DNA of 63,202 bases, the filler included, from Octopus bimaculoides (lineage: Eukaryota): assembly GCF_001194135.2 (NCBI RefSeq). It is 10 parts of 8 records of this genome, joined end to end, with 100 filler letters (N's around TTAATTAATTAA, not from the genome) between each part and the next. Parts side by side here need not be neighbours in the genome. Positions count along the whole stretch, not along the records: positions 51,268 to 58,520 come from NC_068994.1; 9 more parts are not named here. One strand, written 5' to 3'. Under the pieces are notes generated by a model that did not search any database, was not told the DNA's origin, and saw only the letters and a list, made by a program, of their open reading frames with translations. Positions 4,006 to 58,520 of the stretch are shown here, one piece after another. Every line of letters begins with the position of its first letter. The first letter of the stretch is position 1. The translations under genes were made by a program, and so were the position numbers.

Positions 4006-4933
4006 CAATTGGTTAACTATTTAACCAATCGATTGCTTGATCAATAGCTGAATCAATCGATCAGTTAGATCTATTAAAGTCCTTTTGTCGCTATTCGCAG
4101 CTTCATCTACTCTCTACTCCAGGTGGACTTTGTCAATTCTAGCTGCTTGAGTGATTGACTGAAAGATTAATCGAACAATTGATTAGTTGATTGGTTAAAT
4201 GGTTACCTAATTCAGTAATGATAAATGAAGTGAAGTGAAATAGAACCAGTATGTGTGTTTATCATTAGCACAATGATAAACAATGATCCTCCCGAAATAC
4301 TCCAAATTATGTTCCAACACACGAATTCACAACAAGAATCTTGTAAATCAAATAGAAAAAAAATAATAATTATATTTCATTTTCTATCAAACATTCTAAC
4401 TTCTAACAATTTCTTTGTGCATATACAATTGACATAATAAATACTAATTTTCAAATTAAAATATCTATTATCTTGAAATATAATCAAATAAATCAAACAA
4501 TGACGTGAACCTTCATACTCTCGGTGGATTCGAACATGAATATGATAATCGCTGTTATGTGTTGTGTAAGTAGAACAATTTCCCTATTTTTCATTTGTAA
4601 AATTTCCCCTATAAATAGCCTGTCATTTACTCCCTGTTCTCCTCCTCCGTCTCTATGATTCTTTCTCTCTCATTTTATGTGTAGCTTCCTTTTATTCATT
4701 GTCTGCCACCAAGCCTATTATGTGCGGTCATCTTGCACTTCTTATGTTAACACTCCTTGTATCTATATTTCACATACGCTATCTCCTATAACGCGTGTGT
4801 TCTATATGTTTTCATATATTTTGTCTGACCGAAAAAAAAAATCTCCTAGGATTATATCCGCAGCGAAAGGGCATTTCACGTCCAAGTTCCTTTCCGCAGA
4901 AACTACGTCTTATTAATGATTCAAATGATTATA

Positions 4934-6770: not shown

Positions 6771-7380
6771 GTCGTCGTCGTCGTCGTCATCATCATCATC
6801 ATCATCATCTCAACACCATCATCATCATCGTTGTCGTCATCATCACCTTCCTCTTTTCCCTACCCCCACCTCCTCCTCCTCCTCCTCCTCCGCCTCTACC
6901 TCCTCTTCCTCTTTCTGTTCCTCCTCATCATCATTATCAACAACAACACCATCCTGTCTAATCCCCTTCGTCGGTTGTTCTTTTCGCTGTGGAACCTATA
7001 ATCGTTGGTGTTAGGATTACGTTTGCCAGATCAGCGGCACTTGGCCATGTTTCAGGACGACATGGATGTGGCGCAAATGCTAGCAAGGGGCGAATGGTGG
7101 AGATGGTGACAGCGATGGCCACAACGGTGACGGCGATGACGAAGCTGACGATGTCGACGACGATGACGAAGCTGATGATGACGGCCATGACAAAAGTGCT
7201 GCTGATGACGATGATGACGCTGATGACGATGATGACGTTGACGATGATGATGCTGATGATGATGCTGATGATGACGATGACGATGACGATGATGATGATG
7301 ATGAGTAGGAGTGGGAGGAAGACGATGCTATTGCTGCAGATGATGATAATGATGATGATGCTGATGATGATGACGCTGAC

Positions 7381-7610: not shown

Positions 7611-8028
7611 CGACGACGACGTCTAGGTCGATGACAGCGATGATGACGACGATGACAACGAAGGCAACGGCAACGATATGTCGACAACGACGACGACAAC
7701 ATCCTCCACCACCACCACCACCGCCACCAAGATAATTCTGGTGATTATCGCAACCACGATGCAGTTTGTGCTGGCCGTGTTCATTTGGCGAGGGTGATGG
7801 CGACGACGTACAGTTGTGCTGTTGTCTGTGTTGAAGCTGGAGAACGATAGGGGGGCGGGATGGGAAGAGTGCGGGATGCGATGAAGGAAAATTAAAAGGC
7901 TGATTTGTTTCAACAAAAAAAGCAAATCTGCTTCCCTGAAAGGCTTGTTATCGGCCAATCAGCAATTAATAGTCTCTACAAGTTGCTAATCGAGCGACTC
8001 ACTTAATAATAATGATAATAGTAACAGC

Positions 8029-8078
<50 letters not shown>

Positions 8079-8170
8079 TAATTATAATAATAATAATGGT
8101 AGTAATGATAGTAATGATAGTAATGATAATAATGATAATAATAATAATAATAATAATAATGATAGTAATG

Positions 8171-8237
<67 letters not shown>

Positions 8238-8407
8238 TAATAAAAGTAATAATAATGATAATAACAATGATAATACTACTAATAATATTGATAGTAATAA
8301 TGATAATAATAATAATGGTGGTGGTAATAAGATTAATATTGATGATAATAATAATTTGAGATGATGGGTAAGATAAGTGTCAATATTAGTAGCAACAAAG
8401 ATAATAC

Positions 8408-8465
<58 letters not shown>

Positions 8466-8608
8466 GATGATGATGATGATGTAGTTGCTGTTGTTTTTGG
8501 TGGTGGTGGTGGTGGAGGTGAGAGTGGTGGTGATGTTAGTGGTGGTGGTGGTGATTATGATGATGATGATGATGACGATGACTATGCAAACAATAGCAAT
8601 ACTACTGT

Positions 8609-8641
<33 letters not shown>

Positions 8642-8924
8642 TGCTGCTGCTGCTACTACTAATAATAATAATAATCAGAAGAAGATGAAGAGGAAGAATG
8701 TAGAAGTAATAACAGTGTTAATAATCATGATAATATTAATACTTATGCTAATAATAATATTGATAATGATGATGATTACGATGATGATGATGACGACGAT
8801 GGTGATGGCGATGGCAATGATAATGATTATTATCATTTTATTTTATTTTTTACCTTTTATTTTAGGCTTTGTTATTAATATTTTGACAATATTTATGTTG
8901 ATGATGTTTGATAATAGTTCCAAT

Positions 8925-8979
<55 letters not shown>

Positions 8980-9013
8980 GCGACAATAATAACAAACGAA
9001 AATTGCTATTTTC

Positions 9014-9053
<40 letters not shown>

Positions 9054-9085
9054 TCCTTAAATAATTATACTACTACTACTACTAC

Positions 9086-9132
<47 letters not shown>

Positions 9133-9135
9133 GAA
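5530..9135. repeat. 3.6-kb mosaic of trinucleotide microsatellites (GTT, AAC, CAT, CCT, GAT, AAT, GGT, ACT)
   Basis: Seen directly; it generates the poly-H/I/M/N ORFs of the track. Confidence 0.97.
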
Positions 9136-9779
9136 GTAATGATAATGACCTAAGCAAACAAAGAAACAACAGCAAACGACACACGGAAATACCTCAGTTT
9201 TAACATAGAATTAATTAATGTATCCTGCTGTGCGTTAATTGTATCGTGAATATCCTCGCACCAAATTGATTAGAGTAACATGTTCTGTTCTTGTCTTTTA
9301 CTGTGTCGAGATTAATTCGAACAACAGCCACGTGAAGTTTAACGTCTGTTTGTTGCATATGTTGACAAAATGGTTGCTTTTATTTTGTCTCATTTTATCT
9401 CATTTTTAATTTTCTTCTGCTTTGTATTGTTGTTCTGTTTTTGCTTTCGTATTAACAATCTTAAAAAGATTGCATTCAACTATTGCTTTTTTTTTTCCTT
9501 TTTTCTTTTTTCTTTTTCTTTTTTCATCCACTGTTGCATGAAACACAGCATGCTATTGATGGGTTATCTATTCTGGTTTTAGATCGAACGTGATCAGTAC
9601 CTGCTCGTGTTAACAAATCGCAGGTTGGATGTGGTGGTCAGGTTGCTCAGTGGTTAATGTTAGCTCAGCTATTATGGCCTTTCTGAAACGTAAACAAAAT
9701 CTGAACAGAGTATGCAAGCACTCAGCTATTTTTTAACTGTGTCAAATGAAGAAGGTCTAAGCGTACGGACATTATAAGG

Positions 9780-10420
9780 GCATAGCAATTCATTCCACGC
9801 GTTCAAAAGATTATCCATGATATCCACCCCCGCCAAGTATAAAGAACAGATAGGCCCATCGCCAAACAACTTTAGGAAGCGGGGTCGACTATTAGAACTA
9901 TGGTGCACGGAGTTAAAGGAGCAACGTTTGAACTGTACCATACATTTACCTAACAAGGTTAAAATCCTTGAGATCATGGCACGCTTTGGCGCTTTGATAA
10001 GAAAATCTTCAACTAAGACAAAGATCCTAGCTAGAGAAATGGTACGTGGTTATGTGCGGATCCTTCTGAAGTCTCCAGAGTGATGCACACTAAGTTTTCA
10101 GCAACTGTTATGGTTTTAGGTGCTGGTGAGTAACGGAGGTTATGTTACTCACAATTTTTCCACAGGTATTTTGGAATTAATTCTGTTGGATACGCTGAGG
10201 TACTGGAGATCGTAGTTAAGCCCTGGATGAATAAAATACGTAGTGAAAGACAATACGTGATTAAAAAAAAACTCCGCTTCGTCTCACAAACCCACGCTAG
10301 TCTAAAATGGGTGTTGGACAAGCTTTATGGCCATGTAACATAAACCTCGTGGTTTCCAAATTCGCCAGATTTAAATCCCATGGATTAGTAGGTTTAGGCC
10401 GTTGTCCCTTGCCATCACAA
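9780..10420 (+). pseudogene. Decayed Tc1/mariner-superfamily transposase (maT/DD37D-like)
   Basis: Frameshifted segments VMHTKFSATVMVLG, YAEVLEIVVKPWM and WFPNSPDLNP. Confidence 0.65.
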
Positions 10421-12544: not shown

Positions 12545-13344
12545 TACACCGTGTACGCATATAGCTTATGACACCAATCGTGAAAAGAAATCCATTTCTA
12601 ATACGATATATTTTATGAGTAAACATATTTTATGAAATTAAATTTAGTACTTACTTATATGAGTTATTCACTTCTCTTGTTACTCGTTTCTTAAAAAAGA
12701 GAATATTCATTCGTTAACACACAGACATATTAAGCTCTGCTCTATATTTACATAGACATAGCGAACATATTCGACTCAAATTATGATACATCATAAAGGA
12801 AAAATATTAATTTTATATGAAAAAATATTTACTATATGAAAACATATATTTCATGTAATAAAATTATTTTATATAATAAGATCATTTTACGTAATAAAAT
12901 ATACTTGATGTAATAAAAGTGTTTGAGTATTAAATGGTATAATCGATTTAATCAAACCAAATATTCGAGTTTTAATATGATATAAGTATTAAATGTTAAA
13001 TATTGATATTGTTGCCACAAACTAAACTGTTTAATAATTAAGTAAACAGGAGGATCCGATGGAATCTTGTGATGGTGGGCATTGGCAAATATTGGATATA
13101 AACAGTTAAAATGTTCCACTTGGCTACGACAAACCAATTTATTCTACTTAATTTGTATGTTCTGTATCCTCCTCCTCCTCCTTATCCTCCTCCTCCTCCT
13201 TATCCTCCTNNNNNNNNNNNNNNNNNNNNNNNNNNNNNNNNNNNNNNNNNNNNNNNNNNNNNNNNNNNNNNNNCATCAACAGCAGCAGCAGCAACAGCAG
13301 CAGCAGTAGCAGCAGTTGTATCACCATTATAGTTCGTGCTGATA

Positions 13345-13872: not shown

Positions 13873-13905
<33 letters not shown>
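13345..13905 (+). mobile_element. Cluster of SINE family B copies/fragments with (ATT)n tails
   Basis: Copies at about 13345-13530, 13531-13640 and 13724-13905 (the last internally deleted: GAGGCGGCGAGCTGGCAGAATCGTTAGCAC|GACTTTGCC). Confidence 0.8.
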
Positions 13906-16120: not shown

Positions 16121-18207
16121 TGTACGTATGTATGTATCTATTAATCTATCTTTCTACACACGCACGCTTCTATGTATATTTAATACAGATAGTATTCGTT
16201 ACTAATCACAATATCATCGTCACCCTTTTCATGCAAACGAAATTAAATAAGTGCATTTTTTGTTTATATATAACATGCAGTTATATAATAAAATATTGTT
16301 ACATACAAAATGGAAGTGAATTGAAGCAAGGCGATATGTAAATATTTAATAGCAATGTCATCTCAATATTACTTATCTTGAAAAGAAAAACGTAAAAACA
16401 ATATTTAAGCAATAAAATATTAATTCATAGTAGAACGCCGACAAAGAATGCAGCTGTTAAAATTGTGAATTTTAAGCTATAAATTAAAATACGGCTAAGG
16501 GTTGTTAACAAAATGGTCATTTAATATTTCAAAAGTATAGCGCGCTTTCACAAATACCTCACGCGTGCTTGCTTGAGAAGTTTCTTTGCGTTTGAAAAAT
16601 AACAACTGGAAAACAATATCAAAAATTCTCTTCACTGAACACTTTTATTGAAAAGTCTAATTTTGGTTAAGCCTGCTTATTTTTCTCCTTCTGGGAACAG
16701 AATGTAGGAGATGAATATTTATTATACCTTATTATTCCTGAGGGTCTCACCAAACTGATCACAAATGGATGGTTGCAGCAATTTAAGTATTTACATTTGC
16801 ATATATGACACGGTAGTTACTTACTCACGCACACAGAGAAATGCGTACATAATTATATTAATTAATTATTTATTTGTTTATTTTTGCTTGATGTGTTTGC
16901 TTGAATGGTCAGTGGGGAAGACCATCATAAACTCTAGCAGACTAGTGAAATTGTTGACGTTAATGTTTCTCTTAACCCTTCACCCTTTCTGTGTATCACG
17001 TGTAATACACAGGACGTATTTCGTTGGCATACATGCATCGTATGTGATACACATTTTCTTTTCTTTCAACCATCTGGATAATTTGGGATATGTAGAATAC
17101 AAGCTTTACATTTCAAGGACTGTAGAACAAAATGGCTAAAAAGAAAATTTGAAGACAAGCATGGGTGTTTAGGACAAACTTATGAAAATGATTTGGACAG
17201 GTGAAAGATGAAACTACTGCTAGTCAACATGTGAGAAAGATATGAGCAGATGTGAAATTCTAAAGGGCCAACGTCCAAATAAAGAATTACTAGAAATAGT
17301 GATTAGTGCAATTTCGGACGGGAGCAATATAAAGAATGTGTGAAGGACATGTGTTGTTAGAATACTTGAGAGGAAGTGATATGAGCCCAGCTAGTGATCT
17401 TATGATATCGGTCGGATAACCTTACTCATGACGCGGTCTTGCAGTTTCTGTGCGTGAAATAACAGTAATATCTCATGTGTAAGAATGTTACATTATTATG
17501 GGCATCAACTGAATATTGTAGGCTGCCAGTAATTCCCCAAGGGAAAAAATTACATACAAACATTCTTATTTACACAAATACCTGCATGCAGGCTTACATG
17601 TATAAAATCACGCATGTATACATACATCAATGCATGCATACACATACACATATACTGAAACACATATATCAACACACAAATATGAATTACACACATAAAC
17701 GTTATTCTCACTAACGAAATCTCCTCTCGACTTTTTAATCTATTTATTTAAAATTTCTATGATAAGTTAAAGAAACTTACAGAAAAGAAATAAAATCTTG
17801 ATAAAAGTCATAAACTCACACAGATGAAACGATTTTGTCTTTTCTGTAACTTATGTGTTCAATCGACCTCAAAAAATAATCGGTGTGTGGGGTTTGGAAC
17901 GAAAGGAATAATGGTAAAAATAGCCAAAAGAAAAAAAAAGAGCGATCTAAATCTTCTTAAATCTAAAGATTTAATTCTTGAGATTTTTAGATTAAAATTT
18001 AAACTTTAAACCCTGCAAATACAATGATGAGGAATAAATGTCAAAATGAGTTTTTGTTTGTCATAATATTTGTGCGTATATATTACACATACCTACGTAC
18101 ATACATTACATACATACATATATTTGTATGCCTATGTGCATATATATATATACACACGCACTTCTACATACGTATATATGCGTATAATATATGTATTTAC
18201 ATGTATA

Positions 18208-22096: not shown

Positions 22097-22501
22097 CTTT
22101 TATTATTTTACTTGTTTCAGCGTCATTAGACTGTGACCATGCTGGGGCATCGCCATGAAGAATTTTAGTCGATTGAATCGACCCCAATTCTTGTTTTATT
22201 TTTGAGCCTGCTACTTATTCTATCGATATCTTTGGCCGAATCGCTAATTTACGGGGACGTAAACACACCAGCACCAGTTGTCAAGCGGCGGTGGCGGACA
22301 AACATAGAAACGCAGACACACAAATACACACACACACATATACGACAGAGTTTTGTCAGTTTCTGTCTACCGAATCCACTCAAGATTTTGGTCGGCTAGA
22401 GGGTATAGTAGAATACACTTGCCCAAGGTGCCACGCAGTGGGACTGATCCCGGAACAATGTGGTTCAGGATACGTAAAGGCAACACCTTTACCACACAGC
22501 C
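22097..22501 (-). mobile_element. SINE family A, diverged
   Basis: Aligns by eye over its length to the 25196 copy (CAAATCCACTCACAAG, TTGCCCAAGGTGCCACGCAGTGGGACTGA). Confidence 0.85.
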
Positions 22502-51267: not shown

Positions 51268-51680
51268 GGGCTGTGATCATTAATGTCTTCTATAATTACT
51301 TTGACTTTCAGAATCTTCATAAAAGACTTTGCCTTGTTTACAGATATTTTAATATATTTGAAACATTGTTTCCTTGGTTTGCACAGAGACTCGGCATCAA
51401 TTTTGTGTGCCGTGTACAATTTACCATCTTGTGTGACATTGAACAACTGGGAACTTTCCATCCATTCTTGCTGAAGTTGGTTATATGTTAGTAGATTTCT
51501 GTCTGTCAAAGAGCCACTGTCACCCAGCATGGCATCAGCAGCAACATCTCCAATAAAAGTTTGGGGACTACTTTCTTCGTCGACATGGTACTCGAGGTCA
51601 ATTGAAATGCAGAAGTGTAGTAATACAACCAAAATATTTATTTGAATGGACAACTGTCGCCCTGGCATTCCTCCTCCCAT
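51268..51680 (-). CDS. Pcdh: Protocadherin, 5' part only (signal peptide + first cadherin repeat EC1), truncated by an assembly gap; here called gene B
   Basis: Translation MGGGMPGRQLSIQINILVVLLHFCISIDLEYHVDEESSPQTFIGDVAADAML...LFNVTQDGKLYTAHKIDAESLCKPRKQCFKYIKISVNKAKSFMKILKVKVIIEDINDHSP. It has a hydrophobic leader, the EC1 Cys pair (DAESLC...CF) and the DxND(N/H)xP calcium-binding motif. ATGs lie at 51680 and 51668; the track start at 51683 is a GTG. The track stop (51216) is inside the artificial gap linker and is not real. Confidence 0.95.
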
Positions 51681-51882
51681 CACTTTGTTTAGTACAACAC
51701 TGAGACATGTAACCCCATATATGGTAACTGGAACAAGAGGAACAGCAGTGGTCTCTCCGAGAATGATGATATTAAAGGCATAATGTTGAAAGGTATTAGG
51801 TATAATAAAATGGGAAGAATAATAGATACCAAGTGGACATTAAGTGGACATCAGGTAAACATCATGTAGACATCAGATTGAT

Positions 51883-51900
51883 CTGCAAGAAAAGGAAAAA
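51883..51900 (-). promoter_or_regulatory. Splice acceptor opening the protocadherin B coding exon (implies a 5'UTR intron)
   Basis: Minus strand reads TTTTTCCTTTTCTTGCAG|ATCAATC, about 200 nt upstream of the ATG. Confidence 0.6.
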
Positions 51901-51962
51901 CCTTGACATTAAAATTATCTGCCACATTAGCAATTGTTAGTTCACACACACATATGCATATA

Positions 51963-52090
51963 TCCTTTTCTACTCTAAGCACAAAGCCCAACATTTTTGG
52001 GGAGGGGGCCATTCGATTAGATTGACCCCAGTATGCAACTGGTACTTAATTTATTGACCCCAAAAGGATGAAAGGCAAAGTGTCAACCAT
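51963..52090 (-). mobile_element. SINE family B, 3' part, in the protocadherin B 5'UTR intron
   Basis: TTTTCTACTCTAAGCACAAAGCC...CAACTGGTACTTAATTTATTGACCCCAAAAGGATGAAAGGCAAAGT. Confidence 0.8.
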
Positions 52091-53183
52091 GTTGGAGCAC
52101 CACTTTATATACTGGGACAACCCTAAGGTGGCTGATCTTAACAGTTTTGTATTGTTTTCTGACACTGCATACAGGACTATTTTATCCAATGTGACCTTCC
52201 TATTTAAGAAAGTAGAGTGTATGTTGGGTGAACTTTGTCACTATTTCTAGCAAACTGACCAACCAGTTAGAGGTTTCCCACTTTAGCTTGTCTCGTTATG
52301 ACTGCTTTTGTTGATCATCACCATCATCACAATTACCACAAGCTAACAACAACTTGTATCATGGAGTCAGCGCTTGTCATGTTACCACATCCATAACAAA
52401 ACTAATGAAATCCCTCAACCCTATGTCAACTCCTTTCACTTGCCAGCCCTGTTACAGAGTATACTGAGAGTATTTTACTATGGCATCAGCAACAGGGGTT
52501 GTTTGTTCCCAGGAAACCTAAAGAGTCATCTCTACCCTAGAATGTTGTCTCATTCTCAGCAAATAGAAAACAACATAATGACAAGGAACCAGGGTGAGGG
52601 TCTGACAGAAAAGACTACAATGCTACATGCATCAGAAAATACTTCATAATATGGCTGAAAGGTTTCATAGAGAATGGTCCCTGAAGCAGTATTTGATTCA
52701 CAGCTTACTGAAGGAATTATCTTCTGGAGAGATAGGCAGTTGGTCAAAGATGACAGAGACAGATAGACAGCAACATAGGAATATATTCACGTGTGTGTGT
52801 GTGTGTGCACATTCATCCATATATATCTATGAATATATTCATACATCTTAAAGACACAAGACCAATTCTTTTTATGATGAGGAAGATGCAACCAAGTTAT
52901 TATCATTGAGCCATCAAAGATTCACTTTAATCAGATGAAATTATGAAGTTTAGAAGAAATACAGAACCTTAAATACGTCTTTCTGAGTTTTGTTGGTATA
53001 AAATATGGTGGAATATGCAGAACGAGAAAGAGTGAGAGTTTTTCTATTCCTAACATGGCTGCCTTCATTTTTGATAATGACAGCACAGATTAATAATTAC
53101 AAAGGAAAATTTATTGTCACATTTACAAAGTAACTGGAATAAAATGATACACACACACACATACATATCCATAGACATATATA

Positions 53184-53230
<47 letters not shown>

Positions 53231-55450
53231 NNNNNNNNNNNNNNNNNNNNNNNNNNNNNNNNNNNNNNNNNNNNNNNNNNNNNNNNNNNNNNNNNNNNNN
53301 NNNNNNNNNNNNNNNNNNNNNNNNNNNNNNNNNNNNNNNNNNNNNNNNNNNNNNNNNNNNNNNNNNNNNNNNNNNNNNNNNNNNNNNNNNNNNNNNNNNN
53401 NNNNNNNNNNNNNNNNNNNNNNNNNNNNNNNNNNNNNNNNNNNNNNNNNNNNNNNNNNNNNNNNNNNNNNNNNNNNNNNNNNNNNNNNNNNNNNNNNNNN
53501 NNNNNNNNNNNNNNNNNNNNNNNNNNNNNNNNNNNNNNNNNNNNNNNNNNNNNNNNNNNNNNNNNNNNNNNNNNNNNNNNNNNNNNNNNNNNNNNNNNNN
53601 NNNNNNNNNNNNNNNNNNNNNNNNNNNNNNNNNNNNNNNNNNNNNNNNNNNNNNNNNNNNNNNNNNNNNNNNNNNNNNNNNNNNNNNNNNNNNNNNNNNN
53701 NNNNNNNNNNNNNNNNNNNNNNNNNNNNNNNNNNNNNNNNNNNNNNNNNNNNNNNNNNNNNNNNNNNNNNNNNNNNNNNNNNNNNNNNNNNNNNNNNNNN
53801 NNNNNNNNNNNNNNNNNNNNNNNNNNNNNNNNNNNNNNCTGCTCTGTGTATATATTTCACCCTAGTCTTCAGCTATGTTTAACATTGATTTCAATACAAT
53901 TACAATACTTCATCTGCACACTGAGAGATGTTATCATTAATAAGAATAACAACAATAATAATAATGATAATCACTGAAATATCTCACTGAACCAAGCAGA
54001 AATATTCCTCCATGATTGAATATTACAATAAATACACATATTTGATATTAATTTGTATTATTAGAAATGAAACAACAGTTGAGGTAGGTATTTGTCAGTG
54101 ATATAAGGGCCCTTTATAACAGTATCTTAGCATTTTCTCCCATCACAACACTATGTGAAATAAGTGCAACTGCCTATCTTCCTGTATATTTATATATTTG
54201 TCGGACAATACTGTGTTTCTAGGAAATGAAAATGTGAATAATCCAAGATGGGTGTAGACTTACTTTTATTGTCTGATCCATAATCTGGAGCTCTTGGCAG
54301 CAGAGTGTGACAGTCTGGAGAAATGCGTAGCAGGTTGTAAAAAAAGTGTGTTGAAGTTGGTGATAGTGTGTGTGGTTGTGGATCAGAGGCTGTAATGGCT
54401 GCTGCTGCTGCTGTTGCCGCCACTGCTGCTGCCACTGCTGCTGTTGCAGTCTGCTGCAATCACACACACACACACACACACAGACCATTATGGAAGTGAC
54501 TACAGACATTATGTTGTCACTACTTACAGGAATCAAACTCCCTCAAATTTCAGCTTAGTTTAACTATTTGTAAAGTGTGTGTAGAATATATAAACATTTG
54601 ATGTATATTATATATATATACATATGTGTTATTGTTTATGTGTGTATAAATTTGTTCTAGTATTTGAGTAAATGGTGTGTGTGTGTGTGCGTGTAGATTA
54701 TATATACATTAAAGTATGCAAGTAGAATGTTTATATATATTCTGTCTTTGTGTAAAATGCATATATTGCAATGTGTGTGTGGTGTGTGAAATGTGTATTT
54801 CCAATGTGTTGGTATTTGTGTATTTATATATACATGTGTGTATTTAAATGTGAGTGTAGAATGTGCAGATACAAGTATGCATCTGGAGTAAAATGTGCCA
54901 AGAATATTTCAAAGATTGGTGAAATGTAATTCCTTAAATCATTTTTTTAGAATGTTTTTAATTTATATCAATAATTTCTTACAAAGTTATGTGAAGTTAT
55001 CTGGGAAGTAGTGGCTTTCATGCATGGCTAGCAGCATTTAGGGCTTAGCTAAAAAAGAAATCTTGTTATTTGAACCTGGGACCCTAACTGTTTCTATGTT
55101 TCTATGGGTGTACATCATGCGGTAGACCACTGCAACTTCACATGCATATCAAAGATATCTCCCGACATGATATGGATTTATGGTGTTCCCACATTCACTA
55201 CATGTTGGAGACTCTTCCACACCATGTGGAACTATTACATACAGAACTCAGCACATGATAGAGACCTATTCTGGAGATCCAGCACATGTTGGAAATGTAC
55301 AGTAGTGAGATCTTTCCCATGTGGTGAATGTATGCTGAGGAAGTTTTACTGCATGTAGCAAATGACCATGTGGAGTTATAAACATCATTAAACAATAAAA
55401 CTAACTTAGCATAACACTTAAACTGATATTTTCAGACAAATATGTTGAGT

Positions 55451-55514
55451 GACACCATGGAATGATGACACCATGGAGTGACGACACTATGCAGTGATGA
55501 CACCCAAGGGTGAT
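55451..55514. repeat. 16-bp tandem repeat x4
   Basis: GACACCATGGAATGAT / GACACCATGGAGTGAC / GACACTATGCAGTGAT / GACACCCAAGGGTGAT. Confidence 0.85.
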
Positions 55515-55879
55515 GAAGTGGTAGATGTTTAGAAGTCCATTGAGTGTTGTGATACTTCCTACATGAAGACTTAGGGAAGAAGAGTGATGTGTCTTGTTGA
55601 AGGATTGAAAGTAACTGCTGGAGACATTGCAGTTGTTAATGTTGTTGTTATAATGGTTGTTGTGTGAAGTAGTGAGTAGCTGTAAAGAGTGTGACTATTT
55701 GAGATATGTTATTGTTGTTGTGACTATATCCAGTAGTGAAATGGTGTTGTTGCACTTGTATCCAGGGGTTAAATGGCTGTTGTGACTGTATCCCATCTAG
55801 AGTGACATCTACTTTTTAATTCGAGTTGGTAACTGAAAAAGAAGTAAAGAAACCGATCAGTCATTGATTGATATTTTAG

Positions 55880-56097
55880 GAATATTATTGATTTCAAATA
55901 TTTAGCACAAGGCTAGCAATTTCAGTGAAGGAGGGGTGAAAGTAGTCAATTACCTCAATCCCAGCACTTTACTGGCCCCGGAAGGGTGAAAAGCAAACAT
56001 GACTTCTGCAGAATTTGAACTCAGAACGTAGAGAACAGACAAAATGCCACTCAGCATTTTGCCCAGCATGCTAACGATTCAGCCAGTTTGCTGCCTT
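55880..56097 (-). mobile_element. SINE family B, diverged
   Basis: GCACAAGGCTAGCAATTT...GAATTTGAACTCAGAACGT...GCATGCTAACGATTCAGCCAGTTTGCTGCCTT. Confidence 0.7.
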
Positions 56098-56497
56098 ATT
56101 TTAGGAATAATATTAACATGAAGTTTCGTTTTTATCTCTTCGAACAAGGGAATCTAGCACCCCCACTCAGCTCAAAACAATATCTGTGTATCGCGATTTC
56201 CAGGTTATTTCCCTTCATCAGTACAAGGACTAAAATTACAGCAACATTCGTCCTAAACCAGCACTGCTATGTTATGTTGGCAAACAATCTTTTATCTCTG
56301 CTGTTATTGAGGATATGGCCATGGTTGATGTGCAGGGAAGGAATCAGCAGGAATTCTATGTGTAAATCAAAGAAGTATGATGGGATCAGAGGTTGACTGA
56401 CAGAAAGGGTCACCTTCATAGGTGGAAGACACACAAGTAAGTAGTAAGAGTTAAACATGAAACAAACTGCAACAACTCCCCAGAGGTTGTACAGAAT

Positions 56498-56900
56498 GTG
56501 GGGGAAGCTTCTGTTATGGACAGTGGGGGTCACCTCAGTAGTAGTGCCAGTAGGGTCTCTGAAAGAACAGTTGCTAGAGTAAGAACAGGATGGGAAAAGT
56601 TCAAGGAACTATTATTTGTGTTGTTATTAAAGGGCTTTTCTTTCATCATGAAAGACAGATTGTTTGATACTTGTGTATGAAGTGCACTGCTGCATGATGG
56701 CAAGATATGGCCTTGGAACGGTCAAAGGCTGGAAAGAAATGAGCGTAGCATGCTCCATTGGATGGGTAATGTTAGTGTGCATGAATAATGTCACAGTTGA
56801 AATGAGATGAGAGAAAAACTGGTATAAGAGGAACCAGGAGTAGTGTGTAAGGGGGAAGGCTGAGGTGGTATGGGTATAGGGGGACAAAAATGGGTGTCAA
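56498..56900 (+). mobile_element. Decayed RTE-clade LINE RT C-terminus
   Basis: VARVRTGWEKFKELL..L..KGFSF.MK.RLFDTCV, then RLERNERSML.W. Confidence 0.75.
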
Positions 56901-57829
56901 GGGTTTCTGAAACTGAGTTCTTTAAGTGCTGTTTGTCCCACCCACACTTAACAAGAAAACTTCTCATACACCCTACCACATCGAACCAAATTACATCTCT
57001 CCATCTCTACACTTCTCTACATTTCCATTTCATGCTCTATGCCTACCTACCACTCCTCAATCCTGTCCTCTTGGCCCTGTTCCACTATATCATTGCTCTC
57101 CGCTAGCCCCTGATTTGTGTGTTCCACCCACACACCCTGTCTCACTGTATCATTGCTCTCTGCTAGCCCCCACCTGTGTGTTCCACCCACATGTAACAAG
57201 AAAACTTCTCACACATCCTACCCCAACAAACCAATCTACATCTTTACACCACTTCTCTTCCTCACATTTCCTCCTTCATGCACTATGCCTACCTCTCACT
57301 CCCCAATCCTGTCCTCATGGCCCTGTTTTTCTGTATTATTGCTATCCGGTAGCCCCACCCCACCAATCTATATATATACTCAGGTTCTCACCACCCTCTT
57401 CTCCCTCCTCTGCACTCTCCAATCATGCTTCTTTCGCAATATCCTGTCACTTATATTGTGATTTTCGAACCTCAAGGGTATGCCCTGACACTTGCTGCCA
57501 TCTGTATCTCTCTCTTTCTTCGCTTAACCATCCCATTTATATTCTGATCCCTGTACTTTGTGAGTATACCCAGCATTCTGCCACCATCTATCTCTATCCT
57601 GCTGTCTCCCACTCTCTCTCTCCTCCTCCTGCACTTCCCTCAGGTTGGGTAACCATGTATTTCCTTTGCAGTAGTGCACCTGTTTCTGTCTTCATTCCTG
57701 ATATCTCTCCCTCTCTCTCATGTTCTGTCTCTACCTCACTATAATCTTTTATCATCTGACATAAGATCACCTCCTCCAAAGCCCCGTCTCTTCTCAAAGA
57801 TTTTTTTTTGTCTTGCAAGTACTTGGTAA

Positions 57830-58135
57830 CCCTGTCAGTGCAGGTACCACTTAAAAACTCCCAGTCCACACTGTAAAGTAGTTGGTGTTCAGAAGGGCAT
57901 CCAGCTGTAAAAACCTTGCCAAAACTGGCCTCAACTGCTCTTGAACCACATAGAAAGAATTAAGTCCACTCTGCTGAGTGGTTGCTGTTAGAAAGGGTAT
58001 CCAGCTGTAAAAATTAGGCCAAAACAGTTACAGAAGTCTGGTGCAGGTTTCTGCTTGGCCGGCTCCTGTCAAATCATTCCAACCATGCCAGCATGGAAGG
58101 CAGATGTTAAACGACAACGATGATGATGATGACGT
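57830..58135 (+). mobile_element. RTE-related SINE/LINE 3' tail with (GAT)n end
   Basis: AGAAGGGCATCCAGCTGTAAAAA occurs twice; ends CCATGCCAGCATGGAAGGCAGATGTTAAACGAC(AAC)(GAT)n. Confidence 0.55.
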
Positions 58136-58264
58136 TGATACAATCACCCGAGCACACACACACACATACAAATATGTATACAGAAAGACAAATAGACAGA
58201 TAGATAGATAGATAGACAGACAAAGAGACAGGCAGATAGAAAAATTATATCTATTGTAACTTAC

Positions 58265-58520
58265 CAATACTGTATTGGGTGGACTCTTCTCCAGGGTACC
58301 CGTGTTTGACCAATCAATCTGAGACTCATACTGCGGGTAAAAATCTTCCTTACATTCCACAAATGGCATGTTTCTATTATTCATCTCAGAAGAGTACCTC
58401 ACTGGGGTACCAGGAATACTGCTGCTCTGACACGGTAACGGTTGATCAATTCTGTTACATATAGCTGACCGATTAACACCTTTCCTAGTGCTCTTGGCCG
58501 AGCGAGACTGACCACTGCTA
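58265..58520 (-). CDS. Probable 3' end (cytoplasmic part) of a protocadherin large exon, open from the gap edge to a splice donor; here called gene A
   Basis: Manual translation from the gap edge gives 85 stop-free codons: SSGQSRSAKSTRKGVNRSAICNRIDQPLPCQSSSIPGTPVRYSSEMNNRNMPFVECKEDFYPQYESQIDWSNTGTLEKSPPNTVL, followed by TTG|GTAAGT (phase 0, intron starts 58264). It is Ser/Pro-rich, and the FYPxxESQxxW segment resembles my recollection of octopus protocadherin tails. It is on the same strand as the EC1 fragment. Family assignment is inference, not a database match. Confidence 0.6.

What the first reader, a model, noticed from the sequence alone, without database searches (positions are those of the whole stretch)
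51268..58520. Head-to-tail protocadherin unit: donor of gene A, then the start of gene B 6.4 kb later - a variable-exon cluster?
Seen (minus strand): [gap] - end of exon A + donor - 6.4 kb - acceptor + ATG + EC1 of B - [gap]. Known: protocadherins are massively expanded and tandemly clustered in coleoids, and in vertebrate clusters each variable exon splices to shared constant exons. Inference: if the donor of A has no strong local 3' exon, it must splice across B to a shared downstream exon, a convergent variable/constant architecture. Local candidates (acceptors at 55833 and 52724) would instead make A a self-contained gene.
Basis: inference. Interest (0 to 1): 0.7.

Follow-up and report, generated by a model that had tools for sequence, protein, structure and literature searches.

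The report
Two self-contained octopus protocadherin genes
This is an ordinary stretch of the known octopus protocadherin gene array: the tail of one gene finishes at its own tiny last exon 2.4 kb downstream, and the start of the next gene follows, so nothing here needs vertebrate-style shared "constant" exons.

Summary
On the minus strand an open frame ends at 58265 with a phase-0 GTAAGT donor. About 6.4 to 6.6 kb further on, splice acceptors precede an ATG (51680) and a Cadherin_2 EC1 domain. The sequence is Octopus bimaculoides.

The headline reading, a variable-exon cluster splicing to shared constant exons, is not supported. The acceptor at 55833 opens a terminal micro-exon (55832..55809, LPTRIKK*). 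This micro-exon ends the annotated orthologous and paralogous proteins of O. sinensis, O. vulgaris, O. bimaculoides and Argonauta hians.

In all nine related units I examined in four species, each big exon has its own micro-exon copy. It lies 0.5 to 3.5 kb after the donor and, wherever a next gene lies in the fetched DNA, before that gene. Codon changes between copies are mostly synonymous (15 against 2). Two paralogs within O. bimaculoides end differently (LPTRIKK against LPTRVKR), so they cannot share one exon.

Published work already states that cephalopods diversify protocadherins by whole-gene duplication, not by shared final exons.

The caveat is the assembly gap (53231-53838). It lies in the non-coding spacer and breaks no reading frame, but I could not verify that A and B are adjacent, nor the distance between them.

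The parts
58265..58520 (-). 3' end of the large coding exon of protocadherin gene A. It encodes cytoplasmic tail only, CDS 58519..58265 (85 codons, phase 0 at its end), and is cut at 58520 by the piece's edge.
   Evidence: Open frame. 95% identical to P0001. 96% nt identity to both O. vulgaris copies. 95% aa identity to residues 723-809 of the intact 816-aa O. sinensis ORF.
58259..58264 (-). Splice donor GTAAGT of gene A.
   Evidence: Read directly from the sequence. The same donor sits at the same codon in L001, L002 (two copies) and L004.
55833..58264 (-). Intron of gene A (2432 nt), rich in interspersed and tandem repeats.
   Evidence: Bounded by the donor and the conserved acceptor. Homologous introns are 630, 2008, 2095 and 3491 nt. 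Repeats.
55809..55834 (-). Acceptor AG (55834-55833) plus the private terminal micro-exon of gene A: TTA CCA ACT CGA ATT AAA AAG TAG = LPTRIKK*, CDS 55832..55809.
   Evidence: It matches the annotated C-termini LPTRIKR, LPTRIKK, LPTRVKR and LPTRLKK. It is the only hit to the O. sinensis 27-mer in the piece, against 0 of 1000 shuffles. It is one of two sites among 376 AG dinucleotides that pass a simple acceptor filter. Changed codons against the other micro-exon sequences (summed over six rows, two of them identical): 15 synonymous, 2 conservative nonsynonymous.
53839..55808 (-). Sequence downstream of A's stop: presumed 3' UTR, then intergenic spacer. Poly(A)-signal hexamers at 54962-54957 (ATTAAA) and 54270-54265 (AATAAA). 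The last 176 nt (54014..53839) are conserved with O. sinensis.
   Evidence: Hexamers; their use is an inference. 96% match to L001 1-178.
53231..53838 (.). Assembly gap (608 N) inside the A-B spacer. No coding frame crosses it.
   Evidence: The flanks are described.
51728..51729 (-). Acceptor AG 47 nt upstream of B's ATG. It marks the start of B's large exon and implies at least one upstream non-coding leader exon.
   Evidence: An acceptor 33-47 nt before the ATG is present in every one of the related big exons I checked, in O. sinensis, O. vulgaris and Argonauta. Read in phase 0 from A's donor it gives LPYMGLHVSVLY*, so no in-frame A-B fusion is possible.
51883..51884 (-). At most it belongs to B's 5' leader.
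   Evidence: Pyrimidine fraction 0.75. Read in phase 0 from A's donor it stops after 6 codons, INLMST*.
51268..51680 (-). Start of protocadherin gene B: ATG, signal-peptide-like segment and EC1 (137 codons), cut at 51268 by the piece's edge.
   Evidence: Pfam Cadherin_2 E=1.2e-8, 35.1 bits against a cut-off of 23. 100% identical to O. bimaculoides P0003 over 105 aa. Mosaic: the first ~220 nt are 40-68% identical to the O. sinensis METRET-type gene and the rest 93-96%.

Best explanation
The piece holds the junction between two separate, complete-gene units of the Octopus bimaculoides tandem protocadherin array, both on the minus strand.

Each unit is built as follows:
- at least one non-coding leader exon, inferred from the acceptor 33-47 nt before the ATG;
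- one ~2.4 kb exon encoding signal peptide, six EC repeats, TM helix and almost the whole cytoplasmic tail;
- a phase-0 GTAAGT donor;
- a 0.5-3.5 kb intron;
- a private terminal micro-exon of seven codons plus stop, LPTR[I/L/V]K[K/R]*.

Gene A's donor at 58265 splices to its own micro-exon at 55832..55809. Transcription probably ends within the next 1-2 kb. Gene B starts after a ~4.1 kb spacer that includes the estimated gap.

Diversity in this array comes from duplicating the whole unit, 3' micro-exon included, with gene conversion between copies. It does not come from variable exons spliced to shared constant exons.

Shown: the sequence features, their conservation, and the per-unit duplication of the micro-exon. 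Inferred: actual use of the 58265-to-55832 junction in O. bimaculoides RNA, the poly(A) site, B's leader exon, and an intact ectodomain in A.
For: (1) O. sinensis P0001 is 95% identical to exon A and continues after ...TTIL with LPTRIKR*. The window encodes LPTRIKK* immediately after the AG at 55833, in phase with the donor.

(2) Full-length proteins end the same way: O. vulgaris P0011 (LPTRIKK), Argonauta P0012 and P0013 (LPTRIKK, LPTRLKK) and O. bimaculoides XP_014772602.1 = P0026 (LPTRVKR). More distant paralogs (51-61% identical) end with related short peptides.

(3) Private copies. Each donor is followed by its own micro-exon:
- L001: last exon base 10381, micro-exon 13873-13896.
- L002: 12424 to 13055-13078, and 20298 to 22307-22330. 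The first micro-exon precedes the second gene's ATG at 17875.
- L004: three units, micro-exons ending at 7020, 14549 and 22140, with non-overlapping gene ranges.
- L005: micro-exons at 4789-4812 and 12916-12939.

(4) The copies differ in nucleotide sequence, mostly at synonymous sites (15 synonymous against 2 nonsynonymous codon changes). Sequence beyond the stop diverges at once. This is a small island under selection on the peptide.

(5) Within O. bimaculoides, A ends ...PPNTVL+LPTRIKK and P0026 ends ...PPTTIL+LPTRVKR. These are two different terminal exons, not one shared exon.

(6) The same logic holds in another subfamily. In L003, five units each carry their own exon 2 and exon 3.

(8) Gene order. 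In Argonauta, MEVDC-type genes precede the METR-type gene. In O. sinensis, the homolog of the gap's left flank lies upstream of the METRET-type gene. The distal half of B's EC1 is METRET-type at 93-96%. This is consistent with the scaffold order A then B.
Against: - I could inspect no RNA evidence from O. bimaculoides. The junction rests on annotated protein models of four species and on conservation.
- A's ectodomain lies in the neighbouring gap, so A could be a 3' gene relic. One such relic exists in O. sinensis at L001 21590-22057.
- The A-B adjacency crosses an unsized gap. B's 1.55 kb upstream region and its first ~220 coding nt have no counterpart in the O. sinensis locus that holds the left flank.
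- O. bimaculoides also has a full METRET-type gene elsewhere (P0026).
- NCBI models in these arrays include at least one cross-unit join, P0041. Skipping of private 3' exons therefore cannot be ruled out from DNA alone.
Confidence: 0.82

Rival explanations
1. Vertebrate-like variable/constant cluster. A's large exon is a variable exon whose donor splices across B, and across further variable exons, to shared constant exons at the 3' end of the array.
For: The genes lie head to tail, and the large exon ends in a phase-0 donor. One NCBI model in another subfamily, P0041, joins a big exon to 3' exons 27 kb downstream, across three units.
Against: - A conserved private terminal exon lies 2.4 kb after the donor, and likewise in all nine units examined.
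- Terminal peptides and their codons differ between paralogs of one genome.
- The part that could be 'constant' would be only seven residues.
- Annotated gene ranges in Argonauta do not overlap.
- The literature states the opposite (PMC9068888).
Confidence: 0.03
2. One gene on mis-ordered contigs. The contig with B's 5' end (51268-53230) really belongs upstream of the contig with A's tail (53839-58520). The ~1.8 kb of EC2-EC6 and TM would then be hidden in gaps.
For: - Both fragments are cut by gaps exactly where the near-identical ectodomain sequence would begin and end. Short-read assemblies collapse such sequence.
- A's tail (PPNT, LPTRIKK) and the first half of B's EC1 both resemble the MEVGC type, weakly.
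- I could not verify the join across 53231-53838.
Against: - The scaffold order as given reproduces the unit anatomy of sister species: tail, micro-exon, 3-5 kb spacer, leader acceptor, ATG.
- The homolog of the left flank lies upstream of a protocadherin start on the same strand in O. sinensis.
- Tandem same-type copies are the rule: two in L002, at least four in Argonauta.
Confidence: 0.08
3. A is a non-functional 3' relic: a tail plus micro-exon with no ectodomain, left behind by unequal recombination next to gene B.
For: O. sinensis carries such a relic. L001 21590-22057 has only the end of EC6, the TM helix and the tail, with no cadherin coding sequence upstream. A's upstream sequence is unknown because of the gap.
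Against: The A tail is an intact 85-codon frame with only 3 aa differences from O. vulgaris. Its donor, acceptor and micro-exon are intact. The adjoining gap is the expected result of collapsed near-identical ectodomain sequence.
Confidence: 0.07

Closest known systems
Octopod tandem protocadherin arrays (O. bimaculoides chromosome 14 cluster; Albertin et al. 2015 and 2022; Styfhals et al. 2019)
   Same: Same organism and same family: head-to-tail multi-exonic genes, closely related neighbours, and signs of gene conversion (B's mosaic EC1). The published mechanism of diversification, full gene duplication, is what the private micro-exons show.
   Different: Nothing essential. Only the anatomy of this subfamily is spelled out here: a leader acceptor 33-47 nt before the ATG, and a 7-codon terminal micro-exon. 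It can be read off public gene models.
Vertebrate Pcdh-alpha and Pcdh-gamma clusters (variable exons plus three shared constant exons)
   Same: Tandem large exons, each encoding ectodomain, TM helix and a proximal cytoplasmic segment, and each ending in a splice donor (established knowledge: Wu and Maniatis 1999; Chen and Maniatis 2013).
   Different: In vertebrates there is no coding exon between consecutive variable exons, and all isoforms share a constant C-terminal domain of roughly 120-150 residues. Here every unit has its own terminal exon, which encodes only seven residues and differs between paralogs.
Vertebrate Pcdh-beta cluster (self-contained genes without constant exons)
   Same: A tandem head-to-tail array of self-contained genes, each with its own short, gene-specific cytoplasmic tail and no shared constant region (established knowledge: Wu et al. 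2001).
   Different: Pcdh-beta genes have a single coding exon. The octopod genes are multi-exonic, with a leader exon or exons, a large exon, and one or two small private 3' exons. The expansions are independent (PMC4978886; PMC9068888).

Membership tests
Protocadherin (cadherin superfamily) | N-terminal cadherin EC1 domain (Pfam Cadherin_2) with a calcium-binding DxNDx linker motif | tested here: met
   B: Cadherin_2 E=1.2e-8, 35.1 bits against a cut-off of 23. It ends ...IEDINDHS at the piece's edge.
Protocadherin (cadherin superfamily) | Six or seven EC repeats, a single TM helix and a cytoplasmic tail in one polypeptide | not testable with these tools
   EC2-EC6 and the TM helix of both A and B lie in assembly gaps outside the piece. 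By homology, A's tail is 95-96% identical to the tails of intact 815-816 aa proteins with six EC repeats and a TM helix.
Vertebrate-type variable/constant clustered Pcdh architecture | No private 3' coding exon between one variable exon and the next | tested here: not met
   A micro-exon at 55832..55809 lies between A's donor and B's ATG. A private copy follows the donor in all nine units examined, and it precedes the next gene wherever one lies in the fetched DNA (L002, L004, L005).
Vertebrate-type variable/constant clustered Pcdh architecture | All isoforms share identical constant exons encoding a common C-terminal domain | tested here: not met
   Paralogs within O. bimaculoides end LPTRIKK (A) against LPTRVKR (P0026). 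Copies within Argonauta differ at the nucleotide level. C-termini across 120 octopod protocadherins are heterogeneous. The far 3' end of the array itself was not available.
Vertebrate-type variable/constant clustered Pcdh architecture | Each variable exon is a first exon with its own promoter directly upstream | tested here: inconclusive
   A conserved acceptor 33-47 nt before the ATG shows that the large exon is not a first exon. I could not locate the leader exon or the promoter.
Octopod tandem whole-gene protocadherin array | Neighbouring complete genes on the same strand, head to tail | tested here: inconclusive
   Both fragments are on the minus strand in the order A then B. An unsized scaffold gap lies between them. 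Synteny with O. sinensis and gene order in Argonauta agree with this order but do not prove the join.
Octopod tandem whole-gene protocadherin array | 3' exons are duplicated together with the large exon, so each unit is self-contained | tested here: met
   Window unit A, plus L001, L002 (two), L004 (three) and L005 (two), have private micro-exons. The five L003 units have private exons 2 and 3.

The most novel reading that the evidence does not exclude
Private 3' exons are sometimes skipped. A large exon's donor would then join the near-identical 3' exons, or the leader acceptor, of a downstream unit. Transcripts would run across several units, and the duplicated 3' exons would act as interchangeable quasi-constant exons.

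The one concrete hint is the NCBI model P0041 in O. sinensis. It combines the large exon of unit 1 with exons 2-3 of unit 4, 27 kb downstream. Its last 91 residues match unit 4 with 0 mismatches and its own unit with 1 mismatch. Fused multi-unit models of 4660, 1571 and 1786 aa also exist.

For this locus it would mean A's donor occasionally joining B's unit. Both acceptors upstream of B's ATG give stops within 6-12 codons, so no fusion protein would result.

These models may equally be annotation chimeras caused by near-identical paralogs.
Probability: 0.1. Interest if true: 0.55.

Novelty: already known. Interest (0 to 1): 0.12.

Why it matters
Had the variable/constant reading been true, it would have been a striking second invention of the vertebrate clustered-protocadherin splicing scheme. 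It would also have contradicted published cephalopod genome analyses. The evidence instead places this locus within the published picture: octopod protocadherin diversity comes from duplicating whole genes, 3' exons included.

What remains useful is practical. The anatomy of this subfamily (leader acceptor, ~2.4 kb exon, 7-codon terminal micro-exon) can help to repair fragmented or fused gene models in these arrays.

Tried and rejected
- Pfam on the A tail found nothing. A's identity rests on homology only.
- Pfam on five spacer ORFs found no credible domain.
- Rfam at E<=0.1 gave only sub-threshold miRNA-model hits on TA/AC microsatellites beside the gap. ARAGORN found no tRNA-like element.
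- I tried to close or bridge the gap with other assemblies. Look-ups of the O. bimaculoides models P0003 (B) and P0026 returned 'not on record'. A look-up of O. bimaculoides P0028 on the chromosome-level assembly returned a different locus that shares only interspersed repeats.
- The O. sinensis region upstream of L001, where A's true ortholog should lie, could not be fetched. The only gene model there, a 4660-aa fused product, is not in the searchable protein set.
- L001's own gene (tail 94% identical to A) and L002's copies (96%) are paralog-level or positionally non-orthologous. Their introns and spacers do not align with the window apart from the micro-exon and repeats.
- Albertin et al. 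2015 (PMC4795812) is not held in the library. I used Albertin et al. 2022 and Styfhals et al. 2019 instead.
- An in-frame A-B fusion through either acceptor upstream of B's ATG is rejected, because both give stops after 6 or 12 codons.


Full report
**What is in the piece**

Both features lie on the minus strand. The piece opens at 58520 inside an open frame (58519..58265, 85 codons) reading SSGQSRSAKSTRKGV...FYPQYESQIDWSNTGTLEKSPPNTVL. The frame ends in phase 0 at 58265, followed by GTAAGT.

At the other end, an ATG at 51680 opens a frame running MGGGMPGRQLSIQINILVVLLHFCISIDLEYHV...IEDINDHS. The piece's edge cuts it at 51268. This fragment matches Pfam Cadherin_2 (E=1.2e-8, above the curated cut-off). 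It is 100% identical to an Octopus bimaculoides model, P0003, which identifies the organism.

A second acceptor at 51729-51728 sits 47 nt before the ATG.

**Is exon A a protocadherin?**

The 85-residue tail has no Pfam hit, and a search of 5.8 billion proteins found only two relatives. The better one is O. sinensis LOC118766020 (P0001, 134 aa, 95% identical). It turned out to be the C-terminal piece of a complete protocadherin.

In its locus L001 (O. sinensis chromosome CM016872.1), one uninterrupted 816-codon frame (7961-10411) encodes a signal peptide, six cadherin repeats, a TM helix and this tail. O. vulgaris P0011 (815 aa) and Argonauta hians P0012 and P0013 (813 and 817 aa) have the same build and the same tail.

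A is therefore the 3' end of a gene of this subfamily. Its own ectodomain lies in the adjoining gap and was not seen.

**Where does A's donor go?**

P0001 continues after ...PPTTIL with LPTRIKR and a stop. In the window, the AG at 55834-55833 follows an 85% pyrimidine tract. Directly after it comes TTA CCA ACT CGA ATT AAA AAG TAG, which reads LPTRIKK*, in phase with the donor.

- Of 376 AG dinucleotides between the donor and B's ATG, only this site and one other pass a simple acceptor filter.
- The O. sinensis 27-mer finds only this site in the piece, and none in 1000 shuffles.
- Annotated full-length proteins end LPTRIKK (O. vulgaris), LPTRIKK and LPTRLKK (Argonauta) and LPTRVKR (O. bimaculoides XP_014772602.1 = P0026).

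**Private or shared?**

In every unit I could examine, the large exon's donor is followed by its own physical copy of the micro-exon:

| Locus | Species | Last base of large exon | Micro-exon |
|---|---|---|---|
| L001 | O. sinensis | 10381 | 13873-13896 |
| L002, copy 1 | O. vulgaris | 12424 | 13055-13078 |
| L002, copy 2 | O. vulgaris | 20298 | 22307-22330 |
| L004, three units | A. hians | not listed for each | ends at 7020, 14549, 22140 |
| L005, two units | A. hians | not listed | 4789-4812 and 12916-12939 |

In L002 the first micro-exon lies before the second gene's ATG at 17875. In L004 the three gene ranges do not overlap.

With the window this makes nine units in four species. Measured introns run from 630 to 3491 nt, and the shortest unit implies about 0.5 kb. 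The window's intron is 2432 nt.

The copies differ in sequence, mostly at synonymous positions. Compared with the window there are 15 synonymous and 2 conservative nonsynonymous codon changes. Sequence on either side diverges at once.

Within O. bimaculoides itself, A (PPNTVL + LPTRIKK) and P0026 (PPTTIL + LPTRVKR) cannot be using one exon.

A second subfamily behaves the same way. In L003, five tandem units each carry their own exon 2 and exon 3. This is whole-unit duplication, as Albertin et al. 2022 state (PMC9068888; see also PMC6339937).

**The gap (53231-53838)**

The gap lies in the spacer between A's stop codon (55809) and B's ATG (51680), so no reading frame depends on it.

- The left flank (54014..53839) is 96% identical to L001 1-178. 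There the O. sinensis sequence runs on into microsatellites and a repeat, and reaches a protocadherin start on the same strand 7.8 kb later.
- The right flank starts with (TA)17 and (AC)n, a typical break point for short-read assemblies.
- However, the 1.55 kb upstream of B and the first ~220 nt of B's coding sequence have no counterpart in L001 or L002.
- From about nt 230, B's EC1 is 93-96% identical to the O. sinensis METRET-type gene. B is therefore a mosaic.

In Argonauta the order is at least four MEVDC-type genes followed by the METR-type gene, all on one strand. This fits an A-then-B order. The join and the 6.4 kb distance remain unverified, and three further look-ups aimed at an O. 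bimaculoides locus failed.

**The acceptor before B's ATG**

An acceptor 33-47 nt upstream of the initiator ATG is present in every related large exon I checked in O. sinensis, O. vulgaris and Argonauta. These large exons are therefore not first exons. Each gene should have at least one non-coding leader exon, which I could not locate.

No A-B fusion protein is possible.

**Rivals**

- A vertebrate-type variable/constant scheme fails two of its defining features here: there is a private coding exon between units, and the C-termini are not shared.
- 'One gene on mis-ordered contigs' cannot be excluded from sequence alone, because both fragments end in gaps where the collapsed ectodomain would be. 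The scaffold order as given does reproduce the unit anatomy of three other species.
- A could be a 3' relic like L001 21590-22057, but its frame and splice signals are intact.

**Residual novelty**

The NCBI model P0041 joins the large exon of one unit to the 3' exons of the fourth unit downstream (0 mismatches against 1), and several fused multi-unit models exist. These may be annotation chimeras among near-identical paralogs. Only long reads can tell.

**Verdict**

This is an ordinary, already described kind of locus. Interest is low.

Noticed in passing
L003 10001-39688 (O. sinensis CM016872.1, 59.50-59.55 Mb): Five tandem units of a different ('YEEIP') protocadherin subfamily each carry private exons 2 and 3. 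Yet the NCBI model P0041 joins the unit-1 large exon to the unit-4 exons 2-3, 27 kb downstream. Its last 91 aa match unit 4 with 0 mismatches and its own unit with 1 (N/H). This is either real cross-unit splicing or an annotation chimera.
   Followed up: partly
window 51729-51728; also L001 ~7926, L002 ~9967 and ~17841, L003 ~9959 and ~43371, L004 ~9963, L005 ~903 and ~9966: A strong acceptor lies 33-47 nt upstream of the initiator ATG in every octopod protocadherin large exon I inspected. This implies at least one unannotated non-coding leader exon per gene.
   Followed up: partly
window 51680-51268: B's EC1 is a mosaic. The first ~220 coding nt are only 40-68% identical to the O. sinensis METRET-type gene and resemble the MEVGC type slightly more. 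The rest is 93-96% identical and differs from O. bimaculoides P0026 by one residue. This suggests gene conversion or unequal crossover.
   Followed up: partly
L001 21590-22057: A 3' protocadherin fragment (end of EC6, TM helix, tail) with no ectodomain upstream and a variant ending, ...EDFYPQFETQHVPCKKRYLVVTEVNVG*. The same variant tail occurs in an O. bimaculoides model (P0002). Up to the divergence point the fragment is 99% identical to the O. vulgaris copies.
   Followed up: partly
L001 1-22057, L002 18025-23078, L003 40747-49688: The annotation holds fused multi-unit products of 4660, 1571 and 1786 residues that run across several tandem protocadherin units. They are probably model chimeras in near-identical arrays.
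   Followed up: no
window 58138-57839, 56086-55976 and 52081-51965: Interspersed repeats that hit many places, in both orientations, in the O. sinensis, O. vulgaris and O. bimaculoides loci. In L006 the homologs of the last two segments abut as one element. ARAGORN finds no tRNA-like head.
   Followed up: partly
window 57400-56960 (TRF array 57075-57191): A 60-bp unit repeated twice, inside longer direct repeats in A's intron. This produces a spurious 272-aa plus-strand ORF (56926-57744) with no Pfam match.
   Followed up: yes
window 54398-54457: An imperfect (GCT)n / (CAG)n run of about 20 units in the spacer downstream of A's micro-exon. It lies inside minus-strand ORFs that encode poly-Q and poly-A stretches and have no credible domain hit.
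   Followed up: yes
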